Of a stretch of DNA of 64,000 bases, positions 30,302 through 33,300 are shown in pieces (position 1 is the stretch's first letter; the number at the start of each line of letters is the position of its first letter). The DNA lies in contig NC_083278.1 in assembly GCF_963506605.1 (NCBI RefSeq), forward strand, positions 51,460,001-51,524,000, read 5' to 3'. Source of the DNA: Zootoca vivipara (Eukaryota). The notes under the pieces were generated by a model, which was not told where the DNA came from, searched no databases, and saw nothing but the letters and a program-made list of their open reading frames with translations. A program made the position numbers and the translations under genes.

Positions 30302-33300
30302 TCATGATTCCTCATGGATGTCCCAGCAGAACTTGATGGGCAGTTTTTCCATTCTGTCCTTGAAAATGCTGTCAAACCTTTCACTTTGTGCGACTGTCAT
30401 CATGCTCTTCCAGTCTCCAACAGTTCCTGGGCGAGGAAGCAGAAAGAAAGAAAGTGCAATGTGGTGGTCAAAAAAATATCCATAACACCTGATATATTAC
30501 ACCCCTAGATGCAATTGTCAGGTGAATCAGTCAGGGATTCCGCAAGCAACACCAAGTCAAGTTGATCTACCATTAACTTACCTTTGCGAAGAAAACGTCC
30601 TTTGCTGTAGTCCATGAACTCTGGTGGCAAAAAGTCATAGTTTGCCCTGGGATCTGCTTTCATTTTATTAAATGTAGCCTGATCCACAACAGCATCCACC
30701 TCCTTTTCCGTCAGTCTCTTTCCCAGGAAGTTGCATAATTTCAATACACAGCTTCTTAGATCCTGAAATGGGACGTGGTTTTAATGTCAGGCCATCCACT
30801 ATAGAGAAACCGGACAGTCTCATGACTAAAACTCATGGAACAGGCAGGATAACAAGCAGGGAAAACAAGCAGTCTGCATCTTTTGCCTAGTTTGTAATAA
30901 TTGCCATCCTATATAATAAAGTGCAAGTGTCTCTGCGTCCAGATTCCCTGTGTCCCGTTTTCCACGCTAATGCGCATGTGTCCCACGGACACAGGGACTG
31001 GACGAAGAAACTGCACGAGTGCGCTCTCCCCCCCCCCTGCCTCCTCCAACCGCCGCTCCCGGCCAGACACTGCCTCACTGCAGGGCACGTCGGGGAAGCG
31101 AGGGTGGAGGCCGGCGGAGGTGAATGGGGGGGAGGAAGGGCGCTTTGAGGAGCCCGGTCTGGCTCCCACAGCCACGGCCACAGCCCTGGAGCCCGATGCC
31201 ACCATCTTGGTCCGCCGCCACCTCCTCCACCTCCTCCTCACAACCCTCCCTGGCCTGTGAGAGGAGTGGCGGGGCCGCGGCCTTTCCTCCCTCTCTGAGC
31301 TCGGTCACTGGGGGCGTCGTCACCACCGCCTCCCTGGAGTCAGGCAAGGCTGGGCTGTGCAGCGGCGAAGGTGGTGGTGGTGGCAGCAGCAGCTGCGCCT
31401 CTGTCAATCTGGCGGACTTCCCTCCTGCACGCTGCGCGCTTCCCAGCCAGCCACCTGCTGGTGTATCTGCTGCCTTTGTCAGGGAGAACGGAGCGCTGGA
31501 GAGTAGGAGGAGGGCAGATGCACCAGGGCAAGTGCCGGCGGGGCTGAATGTTCCCTGCCGGGGGCAAGAGTGCGGCGCCGGCTGCCCTCCAATGTGGCCG
31601 GAGCCCCCTGCAGGGCACTTTGGGCAGCCTCCCGAGGCTGTGTGACGCCTGCGATGGGTTCTCCAGGCGGGATCGCCGCGCTCCTCACTGCTGCCGCCTG
31701 CTGCTGCTCCTGGGCGCTCCTTCTGGCCTCGGGGGCCCAGCACCCTTATTAAACTCACTGCTCCCGCTCTCGCCTCACCTGCCAGCGAGCGCCTGAGGCC
31801 CACCGGCCCCTCCTCCACCTCCTCCCGCTCTCCCGGGTGGTGACGGCCTCCTCCACCTCCCTTCTCCGGAGGAGAAGGAAGAGGCCTCTGCCGCCTCCTC
31901 CCGCAGCGCACCTCAGGCAAGCACGCCGCCCCTCGCTCTCCCGCCCCGCCGCCCCGCGTCACTCCGCCACAGCAGGGAGGTGGAGGAGGCTGTCGCCACT
32001 CGGGACAGCGGGAGGAGGCGGAGGAGGGGCCAGTGGGCCTCAGGCGCTCGCCGGCGGGTGGGGCGAGAGCGGGAGCTGCGGTGGAGTGACGGGGCGGCAA
32101 GGCGGGAGAGCGAGGGGCGGCGCGCTTACCTGAGGCGCGCTGCGGGTGGCAGCGGCAGAGGCCTCTTCCTTCTCCTCAGGTGAGGAGGAGAAGGGAGGTG
32201 GAGGTGGCCGTCACCAGTCGGGACAGCGGGAGGAGGCGGAGGAGGGGCCGGTGGGCCTCAGGCTTCCCCTCCGTTCCCGCCCGGCTAGTGCCCGTTTACT
32301 GAACGGGCTGAATGACACTAGTTGCTTTTATTCCATGAGCCATGCAGAACGCATTATATTATGGGGCAGCTCTGGATAGCATTTTGATAACATACCTTCT
32401 TCATTTCTTCATAGGTAAGAAACAGAATATTGAAGTCATCCCTGTGAGAGTACCAGCCTTCCACATGGTCCAGCCATAAACTTGCAAGTACTGATGGGAG
32501 AGAAGTTGATTTGGCATAAAATGCAGATGATTTTTTTGAAAAGCATACCGAGAGGTGCAGTAGAAACATATAAACTCAATTAAAACAATTTAAAGGAATC
32601 AATTTAAGAATCACCAGTGGTACAAACCATTAAACAGAAGCTGAACTAATACCACCCAACCTCACCAAACACTTTCTCACCAAAAGAATTTGCAGAAGGG
32701 TTCTGCATTTTAAGGCTGCCTGCAGTGCTTCCAAGCAATGTGATGGAATAGTGGTGGGTGGGCTGAGATAAGTCTAGCCTTCCTCCAGCTCCCTATCTTC
32801 CCACTCTGGCATTTTCCTTATATGGTGTGACAGTTAATACTTGCAACATTTAGGAGACCCTGTCTGGGTTTCTGACTTAACTTGACACAATTCTCTACAC
32901 TTGATTAAGGATTAGGTGCTCCAGCTTGTAATGATTTGATAGTTGTTGCATCCTGATGCAGACAGGATATAAATCCACCTGGTTTCCTTTGGGAGTTGAC
33001 CAGATCTATTCCCTACCTTCTGCCTCTATGGACACTAGTCATCAGTGGCATAAAATGGTGTACTGTAGTTGGAGTCTCAGTTGGAGACTCTTTGTGATGG
33101 ATGGATGTGGAATTTCCTCAGAGTAACCTATACCATCAGACATGGCATTGTGAAAACATTCCTTACCACACAGAGAATTTCTTTAATCTGTTGTCAAAGG
33201 GGGAATAAAGATGAAGGGACCAAAATGATTCATTTTAGAACAACAAATCTAATCAAAAGTGATTCATTTTAGAATAGCAAATCTACCTTACCCTTTCCAG

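What the first reader, a model, noticed from the sequence alone, without database searches (positions are those of the whole stretch)
30907..32321. Non-autonomous Helitron carrying CpG-island-like cargo inside a sulfotransferase intron
All rolling-circle hallmarks are visible: A|TC start, CTAG|T end, 7-bp-stem hairpin 9 nt before CTAG, no TSD, and an empty site in three paralogues. The 5' end TCCTATATAATAAA resembles bat Helibat/Helraiser ends as I recall them. The ~1.3-kb interior has no Rep/helicase and is a GC-rich patchwork that looks like captured host 5' regions. It includes GGCGGCGGACCAAGATGG (ATG 31205, - strand, [22 protein letters not shown]) and a Pro/Ser-rich open stretch at ~31240-31640. 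Helitron gene capture is established in plants and bats; an active capturing family in lizards would be notable.
Basis: partly seen in the sequence, partly recalled or inferred. Interest (0 to 1): 0.78.

Follow-up and report, generated by a model that had tools for sequence, protein, structure and literature searches.

The report
Ordinary non-autonomous Helitron in SULT intron
The GC-rich block is a real 1.4-kb rolling-circle transposon (Helitron) with no genes of its own, sitting in an intron of a lizard sulfotransferase gene; it looks like a family already described in lacertid lizards, so it is a clean but ordinary case.

Summary
The element at 30907-32321 is a genuine non-autonomous Helitron. 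It has an A|TC start, a CTAG|T end, a 7-bp hairpin 9 nt before CTAG, and no target duplication.

In three DNA runs the summed depth at both termini is hundreds to thousands of times that of the flanks. Dozens of contigs diverge into unrelated AT-rich sequence exactly at 30905/30906.

The terminal motifs nearly match those published for Heli1Xen1, a young family reported in Lacertidae (PMC12001565).

- The paralogue "empty sites" are not clean. They carry 24, 23 and 10 bp where the element sits.
- The ATG-31205 segment lies in the high-copy 5' region shared by the family, not in private cargo.
- The cargo is a low-copy block (31297-31765) plus a ~215-bp GC-rich unit present 2.4 times, one copy inverted. 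As single-stranded DNA this folds into a hairpin with ~170-nt arms.
- No host parent was found: 0 of 8 ORFs hit Pfam and 4 of 4 protein searches were blank.
- One RNA run shows almost no reads on the cargo.

Earlier notes from this scan record several similar Helitrons elsewhere in this genome. Interest is low.

The parts
30907..32321 (+). Whole non-autonomous Helitron (1415 bp), antisense to the host SULT gene
   Evidence: Boundaries come from the paralogue alignment and from the depth step and loose ends in reads. It is the only copy in the window.
30906..30906 (.). Target A 5' of the element; T at 32322 is the 3' partner. There is no TSD.
   Evidence: In one search, 31 X1 contigs and 18 X4 contigs match from 30906 onward and diverge before it; 19 more X1 contigs diverge before 30905.
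30907..31296 (+). 5' region shared by the family (left terminal sequence and beyond).
   Evidence: Summed word depth falls from 255784/24643/18480 in the first bin to 40307/8509/2286 at 31230-31296, then to 924/253/94 from 31297 (X1/X2/X4).
30932..31008 (+). Strong subterminal 5' hairpin with an imperfect stem of about 24 predicted pairs (GTCCAG.TTCCCTGTGTCC / GGACACAGGGA.CTGGAC)
   Evidence: ssDNA fold -22.8 kcal/mol, z -5.94; 0 of 200 shuffles fold as well.
31297..31765 (+). Low-copy GC-rich cargo block
   Evidence: Depth 278-924 (X1), 35-253 (X2) and 18-94 (X4), only a few-fold above the flanks. CpG o/e 0.55. No protein relatives.
31654..31752 (+). Signal-peptide-like ORF of 32 codons plus stop ([32 protein letters not shown]). 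It may be a captured first coding exon in the sense of the element.
   Evidence: ORF list. A few RNA reads, 90-95% alike, with first mate on the minus strand over 31498-31765 (depth about 2). No homologue found.
31760..31956 (-). Inverted copy of a ~215-bp GC-rich unit with GGGGCGG boxes and a CAG|GTGAGG donor-like site
   Evidence: Inverted repeats I1-I3, 89-94% complementary; alignment A2.
31962..32263 (+). About 1.4 direct copies of the same unit. Together with 31791-31956 it forms a hairpin with ~170-nt arms.
   Evidence: Direct repeat D1, spacing 218, 92% identity. ssDNA fold of 31755-32270: -248.1 kcal/mol, z -22.58, 0 of 100 shuffles as good. Moderately repeated: X2 depth 622-3210.
32285..32321 (+). 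Right terminal sequence: hairpin 32290-32308, a 9-nt spacer, CTAG 32318-32321
   Evidence: 11 X1 contigs match only from 32285 onward. The bin 32302-32368 has depth 26698/2104/1619; the next bin has 520/4.8/44.
30583..30761 (-). Downstream SULT exon flanking the intron
   Evidence: Pfam PF00685, E 1e-09, profile positions 169-225. RNA joint 30761>32395, 200 reads.
32395..32490 (-). Upstream SULT exon flanking the intron
   Evidence: Pfam PF00685, E 1.1e-07, profile positions 138-166.
45006..45029 (+). 24 bp (TTGCATTATATTATACTTTTATTG) in paralogue 2 at the place the element occupies. Paralogue 3 has 23 bp at 60775-60797; paralogue 1 has 10 bp at 20934-20943.

Best explanation
This is a non-autonomous canonical (Helitron1-type) rolling-circle transposon. 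It is most likely a member or close relative of the Heli1Xen1 family already described in lacertid lizards.

It inserted, antisense, into an intron of one copy of a tandem sulfotransferase gene cluster after that cluster had duplicated.

Inferred mechanism:
- A RepHel transposase encoded by an autonomous partner elsewhere in the genome nicks at the 5' TC.
- It peels off one strand and stops at the 3' hairpin plus CTAG.
- It joins the strand between an A and a T of an AT-rich target, without duplicating the target.

The element encodes nothing. It has three kinds of sequence:
- About 390 bp of 5' sequence and about 37 bp of 3' sequence shared with very many other copies.
- A low-copy GC-rich block, probably a copied gene start.
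- A ~215-bp GC-rich unit present 2.4 times, one copy inverted.

At this locus it looks inert. It adds a CpG-island-like block to the intron, but I saw almost no RNA from the cargo.

Shown here: the structure, the repetition of the termini, absence from the paralogues, and lack of coding capacity. Inferred: the transposition mechanism, the family assignment and the host origin of the cargo.
For: - Ends and hairpin.
- Chance of the junction letters: about 2e-5.
- Absent from 3 of 3 paralogues in the window.
- Depth: the 5'-terminal bin has summed depth 255784/24643/18480, against flanks of about 300-1200/7-13/30-70 in X1/X2/X4. The 3'-terminal bin has 26698/2104/1619, then drops to 520/4.8/44.
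- Loose ends: before 30905/30906 there are 19+31 contigs in X1 and 18 in X4, with consensus agreement only 0.37-0.39, and 188 RNA reads in X21 with agreement 0.5. That means many different, AT-rich flanks.
- Similarity: 417 of 1822 laid X1 contigs are at least 99% alike.
- Here: TCCTATATAATAAA and GCCCGTT-TACTG-AACGGGC.
- No coding capacity.
Against: - The empty site is not clean. The paralogues carry 10-24 bp that this copy lacks, so a small deletion must be added to the story.
- No autonomous partner was seen; none is in the window.
- The family assignment rests on short published motifs, each one letter off.
- I did not see the listed loose ends for the 3' junction; 335 rows were not shown. 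The 3' boundary therefore rests on the paralogue alignment, the depth step and one X4 contig ending at 32322.
- The tool warns that summed contig depth is not a copy number.
- No listed contig bridges either junction with 31 or more letters on both sides. An X2 contig covering 30823-30921 with 0 differences has only 15 letters inside the element.
Confidence: 0.93

Rival explanations
1. The block reached this intron not by Helitron transposition but as filler DNA or a small duplication copied in during double-strand-break repair, with a 10-24 bp loss at the break. The copied piece merely happens to be a complete Helitron from elsewhere.
For: The paralogues carry 24, 23 and 10 bp at the site that this copy lacks. 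Canonical Helitron insertion does not predict that.
Against: Both borders of the extra DNA fall exactly on the canonical ends (A|TC and CTAG|T). They also fall on the point where other copies' flanks diverge. A repair-mediated copy would rarely start and stop on both termini to the base. The missing bases lie between two TTGC repeats in an indel-prone AT-rich stretch whose length already differs among the paralogues (10/23/24 bp), so an independent slippage deletion is enough to explain them.
Confidence: 0.04
2. The GC-rich block is a host regulatory element: a genuine CpG-island promoter or alternative first exon of the SULT gene or of an antisense gene. On this reading the Helitron-like ends are incidental.
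For: GC 0.69 and CpG o/e 0.64 over 1.4 kb. There are GGGGCGG boxes, donor-like sites and a signal-peptide-like ORF.
Against: It is absent from 3 of 3 paralogues. Its termini and most of the interior are multi-copy. RNA depth on 31297-32300 is 0-2.5 in X21, while the neighbouring SULT exons reach 144-471 in the same run. No conserved protein or RNA family was found.
Confidence: 0.01
3. The element is a Helitron, but the interior is family-internal repeat material (GC-rich minisatellite or inverted-repeat sequence travelling with these Helitrons) and not captured 5' ends of host genes.
For: No parent was found: Pfam hit 0 of 8 ORFs and 4 of 4 protein searches were blank. The ~215-bp unit is repeated inside the element and moderately repeated in the genome (X2 depth 622-3210). 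Helitrons are known to carry tandem repeats (PMC12001565 discussion passage; earlier scan note s1-850079).
Against: The central block 31297-31765 is low-copy. It holds a start codon followed by a signal-peptide-like ORF in the sense of the element. A few stranded RNA reads, 90-95% alike, point to a transcribed relative in that sense. In Xenopus, 17 of 19 fragments captured by this family are gene 5' ends (PMC12001565).
Confidence: 0.4

Closest known systems
Heli1Xen1 Helitron family (Xenopus, Bufo, Polypteridae, Cordylidae, Lacertidae; Mob DNA 2025, PMC12001565)
   Same: TC start and CTAG end. TA-rich 5' motif: published 'TATATAAA', here TATATAATAAA. 3' hairpin: published 'CCCGTTA...TAACGGG', here CCCGTT-TACTG-AACGGG. 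Non-autonomous copies far outnumber autonomous ones. Reported in the lacertids Zootoca, Lacerta and Darevskia. Captures mostly gene 5' ends.
   Different: Each motif differs by a letter. Gene capture was catalogued there for Xenopus laevis only, not for lizards.
HelibatN3 / Helraiser of vespertilionid bats (PMC4778049)
   Same: 5'-TC / CTAG-3' ends. A palindrome shortly upstream of the 3' end: 19 bp and 11 nt upstream in Helraiser, against a 7-bp stem and 9 nt before CTAG here. Insertion between A and T. Non-autonomous subfamilies built around a captured promoter plus first exon plus splice donor (NUBPL).
   Different: Different host and different hairpin sequence. Here no parent gene is identified and no chimeric transcripts were seen.
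Anolis carolinensis Helitron-1N1/2N1-5_AC families (PMC3014272)
   Same: Young, abundant non-autonomous Helitrons of 0.5-2 kb in a lizard genome. Low-copy autonomous partners. Occasional incorporation of foreign DNA.
   Different: The Anolis non-autonomous families are described as internal deletion derivatives, and only one has composite cargo. I could not compare sequences.

Membership tests
Canonical Helitron (Helitron1) | 5' end begins TC | tested here: met
   T30907 C30908. The position coincides with where other copies' flanks diverge.
Canonical Helitron (Helitron1) | 3' end CTRR | tested here: met
   CTAG at 32318-32321. It is one of only 2 CTAG in the element.
Canonical Helitron (Helitron1) | Short hairpin about 10-12 nt upstream of the 3' end | tested here: met
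   7-bp stem, 5-nt loop, 9 nt before CTAG; -10.4 kcal/mol, z -3.07.
Canonical Helitron (Helitron1) | Insertion between A and T without target-site duplication, with an empty site elsewhere | tested here: inconclusive
   A|...|T and no TSD at this site. Other copies also match from the preceding A. But the 3 paralogous sites hold 24, 23 and 10 extra bp, so no exact empty site was seen.
Canonical Helitron (Helitron1) | Multiple copies sharing both termini in different genomic contexts | tested here: met
   Terminal bins are hundreds to thousands of times deeper than the flanks in 3 of 3 DNA runs. Dozens of contigs have unrelated flanks at the 5' end. The 3' flanks of other copies were not listed.
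Canonical Helitron (Helitron1) | An autonomous partner encoding Rep/helicase with the same termini | not testable with these tools
   None in the window and no lizard genome to search. PMC12001565 reports 1 to 61 autonomous Heli1Xen1 copies per genome, lacertids included.
Heli1Xen1 family | Terminal sequences matching the family (LTS TATATAAA; RTS hairpin CCCGTTA...TAACGGG; TC/CTAG) | tested here: inconclusive
   Near matches: TATATAATAAA, and CCCGTT...AACGGG with the seventh stem pair replaced. The consensus and logos were not available (supplement closed).
Heli1Xen1 family | Nucleotide identity to the family consensus over the terminal regions | not testable with these tools
Gene-capturing (transduplicating) Helitron | An interior segment matching a host gene at its own locus outside any Helitron | tested here: inconclusive
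   Pfam hit 0 of 8 ORFs. Protein searches of 3 ORFs were blank, and a full scan of 1.84 billion representatives with the signal-peptide-like ORF was blank. A DNA search of the host genome was not possible.

The most novel reading that the evidence does not exclude
The cargo's inverted duplication of a promoter/5'UTR-like ~215-bp unit (arms ~170 nt, 89-94% complementary) may be more than debris. One possibility is that it records a strand switch during rolling-circle copying, and so shows how this family picks up DNA. The other is that it makes this Helitron subfamily a mobile hairpin-RNA locus whose small RNAs target the parent gene's promoter region or sister Helitrons.
Probability: 0.05. Interest if true: 0.55.

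Novelty: new member of a known kind. Interest (0 to 1): 0.15.

Why it matters
It matters little on its own. It is one more insertion of a kind of Helitron already reported in lacertid lizards, and earlier notes from this scan record several similar ones elsewhere in this genome.

Its practical value is for annotation. The only CpG-island-like block in this SULT intron is transposon cargo, not a host promoter. The tandem SULT paralogues date the insertion to after the gene duplication.

The long inverted repeat in the cargo, and the many GC-rich cargos this family carries, could together make a useful data set for asking why Helitrons preferentially pick up gene 5' ends. PMC12001565 explicitly leaves that question open.

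Tried and rejected
**Other copies in the window.**
- Searches with both termini at up to 3 mismatches found only the element itself.
- BLAST of the element against the window gave only self hits and the internal repeats.

**Parent of the cargo.**
- Pfam on 8 interior ORFs: 0 hits.
- The search for homologous proteins on the 60-aa signal-peptide-like ORF found nothing among 2 candidates.
- The same tool on the 110-aa minus-strand ORF with the ATG at 31205 found nothing among 49 candidates.
- The same tool on the 173-aa 'Pro/Ser-rich' ORF found nothing among 577 candidates. That tool only sees proteins 0.55-1.75 times the query length, so full-length parents would be missed.
- The search of protein representatives with the 60-aa ORF against 1,835,955,588 proteins: 0 hits. 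Representatives are clustered at 50% identity, so a lizard N-terminus may be hidden behind another species' sequence.

**Rfam.** One sub-threshold match, MIR839 (a plant miRNA precursor), at 65.3 bits against a gathering score of 200. I rejected it as an artefact of the long inverted repeat.

**Public collections.**
- The hairpin 19-mer in viral contigs: 0 matches.
- A 5'-end 22-mer in viral contigs: 0 matches.
- The hairpin 19-mer in metagenome contigs: 6 loci, of which 0 share the adjoining bases. These are chance matches in GC-rich, probably microbial, contigs.

**Earlier findings by sequence.** Two blanks.

**An empty allele.** The joint 30907>32321 in one X1 contig and one X4 contig carries the paralogues' extra letters between its sides, with only 26-27 letters on the shorter side. 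I attribute it to the paralogues, not to an empty allele.

**Expression of this SULT copy.** The RNA reads on the exons carry 13 fixed differences from the window. The best paralogue in the window matches only 8 of 13. They therefore come from another paralogue. The 200-read exon-exon joint shows where the family's intron lies, not that this copy is expressed.

**Species.** I did not verify it. 'Lacertid lizard' comes from earlier scan notes. The runs are coded as 'organism A'.

**Papers seen.**
- PMC12001565: passages and sections 20 and 22 in full. Its Supplementary Figure S5 and tables were not seen and may bear on the family assignment.
- PMC3014272: passages.
- PMC4778049: passages.
- PMC2997563: search listing and start of the abstract only.
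Full report
**What is in the sequence**

The stretch 30907-32321 is a sharply bounded GC-rich block. Its GC is 0.69 and CpG o/e 0.64, against 0.43 and 0.33 for the whole window. It sits in AT-rich intron DNA.

It begins TCCTATATAATAAA directly after an A and ends CACTAG directly before a T. A perfect 7-bp stem (GCCCGTT/AACGGGC, loop TACTG) lies at 32290-32308, with 9 nt between it and the final CTAG. 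As single-stranded DNA the last 60 nt fold at -10.4 kcal/mol, z -3.07; 0 of 200 shuffles fold as well. The flanks show no target-site duplication.

The two flanking minus-strand exons match the sulfotransferase domain PF00685. Exon 32396-32488 covers profile positions 138-166, and exon 30583-30759 covers positions 169-225. The block therefore lies in a SULT intron, antisense to the gene.

**The paralogue comparison**

The window holds a tandem SULT cluster. Both flanks recur at about 45.0 kb, 60.8 kb and 20.9 kb, at 77-92% identity. The 25-26 bases on either side of the block recur with 0-1 mismatch at two of these sites. None of the three carries the block.

They are not exact empty sites, however. 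Between GCCA and TTGCTTTT they hold 24 bp (45006-45029), 23 bp (60775-60797) and 10 bp (20934-20943). This copy has therefore lost at least the shared 10 bp, TTGCATTATA.

That stretch starts with TTGC, as does the sequence that follows it. Its length already varies among the paralogues. A slippage deletion before or after the insertion is therefore the simplest account. A deletion that accompanied the insertion cannot be excluded.

The paralogue alignment fixes the junctions independently of the terminal motifs. By base composition, the chance of A|TC...CTAG|T at those two junctions is about 2e-5.

**The decisive test: are the termini repeated?**

The window holds no second copy. I therefore laid Logan contigs of three DNA runs from three studies (X1, X2, X4), plus raw reads of one RNA run (X21), on 30560-32560 at 90% likeness or better.

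Summed word depth in X1/X2/X4 was:

| Region | X1 | X2 | X4 |
|---|---|---|---|
| Left flank | 300-1200 | 7-13 | 30-70 |
| 30895-30961 | 255784 | 24643 | 18480 |
| 31230-31296 | 40307 | 8509 | 2286 |
| From 31297 | 924 | 253 | 94 |
| 31297-31765 | 278-924 | 35-253 | 18-94 |
| 31766-32234 | 1109-13427 | 622-3210 | 127-760 |
| 32302-32368 | 26698 | 2104 | 1619 |
| 32369-32435 | 520 | 4.8 | 44 |

Depth stays very high but falls steadily between the second and third rows. The tool warns that summed contig depth is not a copy number. The contrast of two to three orders of magnitude in 3 of 3 runs is nevertheless unambiguous.

Contigs also diverge exactly at the 5' junction. 31 X1 contigs and 18 X4 contigs match from 30906 onward, and 19 more X1 contigs match from 30905. 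Their loose parts have a median length of 255 and a consensus agreement of only 0.37-0.39, and they are AT-rich. That means many different insertion sites, each preceded by A.

188 RNA reads behave the same way. 11 X1 contigs share only the last 37 nt, from 32285.

Limits of this evidence:
- 335 loose-end rows were not shown, so I did not see the divergence of other copies at the 3' junction.
- No listed contig bridges a junction with 31 or more letters on both sides. An X2 contig covering 30823-30921 with 0 differences has 15 letters inside the element.

**Anatomy of the interior**

- **30907-31296 is family backbone.** It is high-copy. It holds a strong subterminal hairpin at 30932-31008 (-22.8 kcal/mol, z -5.94). 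Whatever the origin of that segment, it is shared by very many copies and is not private cargo.
- **31297-31765 is low-copy.** It contains an ATG at 31654 followed by 32 codons that read like a signal peptide, then a stop, in the sense of the element. A handful of stranded RNA reads lie over 31498-31765 (depth about 2, 90-95% alike, first mate on the minus strand). In the same library the minus-strand SULT exons have the first mate on the plus strand. These reads therefore point to a related plus-sense transcript somewhere in the genome. This is a hint, not proof.
- **31760-32263 is built from a ~215-bp GC-rich unit.** The unit has GGGGCGG boxes and a CAG|GTGAGG donor-like site. It is present once inverted (31760-31956) and about 1.4 times direct (31962-32263), at 89-94% identity. 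As ssDNA, 31755-32270 folds into a hairpin with ~170-nt arms (-248.1 kcal/mol, z -22.58). This structure also explains the only Rfam match, a sub-threshold hit to a plant miRNA precursor (65.3 bits against 200).
- **The copies of the unit differ from each other by 6-11%**, while parts of the element occur unchanged in other runs. X2 contigs at 31623-31733 and 31878-31977 have 0 differences, at depth about 21 against 4-8 for the X2 flank contigs. The repeat arrangement is thus probably older than the last transposition, and this particular chimera probably exists in a few copies.
- **32285-32321 is the right terminal sequence.**

**Is the cargo captured host DNA?**

I could not show it.
- Pfam found nothing in 8 ORFs.
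- Three word-indexed protein searches were blank.
- A full HMMER scan of 1.84 billion representatives with the signal-peptide-like ORF was blank.

These tools are poorly suited to short, fast-evolving first exons, and no lizard genome could be searched at the DNA level.

The composition, the GC boxes, the donor-like sites, the signal-peptide-like ORF, and the published bias of this family toward gene 5' ends (17 of 19 captured fragments in Xenopus laevis; PMC12001565) make capture plausible. I put it at roughly even odds against family-internal repeat material.

**Expression**

In X21 (about 6% of the run was read), depth over 31297-32300 is 0-2.5, while the SULT exons reach 144-471.

The reads on the exons carry 13 fixed differences from this copy. 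The best paralogue in the window matches only 8 of 13. They come from another paralogue, so expression of this SULT copy is not shown either way.

The reads on the 5' terminus (68 and 107 on the two strands) have loose ends at the junction. They come from other copies.

**Comparison with what is known**

- **Helraiser/Helibat (PMC4778049, passages).** These passages define the class: 5'-TC, CTAG-3', a palindrome 11 nt upstream of the end, and insertion between A and T. They also describe subfamilies built on a captured promoter, first exon and donor (NUBPL), and the creation of new 3' ends when the hairpin is bypassed.
- **Anolis (PMC3014272, passages).** Young, abundant non-autonomous Helitrons of 0.55-2 kb are described in Anolis.
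- **Heli1Xen1 (PMC12001565, passages and sections 20 and 22).** This is the closest match. The family is reported in Lacertidae (Zootoca vivipara, Lacerta agilis, Darevskia valentini), with an estimated invasion time of 0.58 My in Zootoca. [quoted passage not shown] Its ends are TC/CTAG, with an LTS motif 'TATATAAA' and an RTS hairpin 'CCCGTTA...TAACGGG'.
- **This element** has TATATAATAAA and CCCGTT-TACTG-AACGGG.
The string occurs in 0 papers of the library.

**Earlier notes of this scan**

Several Helitrons with GC-rich or first-exon cargo have already been noted on other pieces of this genome (PPME1, DGCR6, STBD1, TWF1, and introns of EGFR, DENND2C and PAK2). Follow-ups judged them ordinary.

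Those notes led me to look for a paper on lacertid Helitrons. I did not check their individual claims, and they are not counted as evidence here. The label 'lacertid' for this genome comes from them and is unverified.

**Verdict**

This is a real, cleanly delimited non-autonomous Helitron of a known kind. The observation needs one correction (the imperfect empty site). The interpretation needs two corrections: the ATG-31205 piece is family backbone, and the host origin of the cargo is unproven. An active Helitron family in lizards is already in print.

The one feature slightly out of the ordinary is the long inverted duplication inside the cargo.

Interest is 0.15. Novelty: new member of a known kind.

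Noticed in passing
window 30932-31008: The family-shared 5' region carries a strong subterminal hairpin with an imperfect stem of about 24 predicted pairs (-22.8 kcal/mol, z -5.94). The published Heli1Xen1 passages I read do not mention a 5' hairpin.
   Followed up: partly
window 30560-30761 and 32395-32502: RNA reads of run X21 on these SULT exons differ from the window at 13 fixed positions. They match the best paralogue in the window at only 8 of 13. The expressed SULT is a paralogue outside the window or a divergent allele, and this copy may be silent.
   Followed up: partly
window 30010-30101 and 14663-14754: A 92-bp stretch is 97.8% identical between these two places, far above the 78-90% identity of the surrounding paralogous DNA. 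It may be a young repeat or a gene-conversion patch.
   Followed up: no
window 27986-28400 and 29700-30100: Two further GC-rich blocks (GC 0.61 and 0.54, CpG o/e about 0.6) lie just downstream of this SULT copy. They share no similarity with the Helitron. Another note of the scan covers the first one.
   Followed up: no
window 30839-30872: A 13-bp tandem repeat, AACAAGCAGGGAA x 2.7, lies 35 bp upstream of the insertion point and is conserved in the paralogues.
   Followed up: no
window 31114-31233: Other family copies in 3 of 3 DNA runs skip about 109-118 bp here (joints 31114-31120 > 31229-31233). This part of the shared 5' region, which holds the minus-strand ATG at 31205, is therefore an insertion/deletion variant within the family.
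   Followed up: no
window 31341-32133: One contig each in X2 and X4 joins 31341 to 32133. Relatives of this element therefore exist that lack most of the low-copy block and the first 1.7 repeat units.
   Followed up: no
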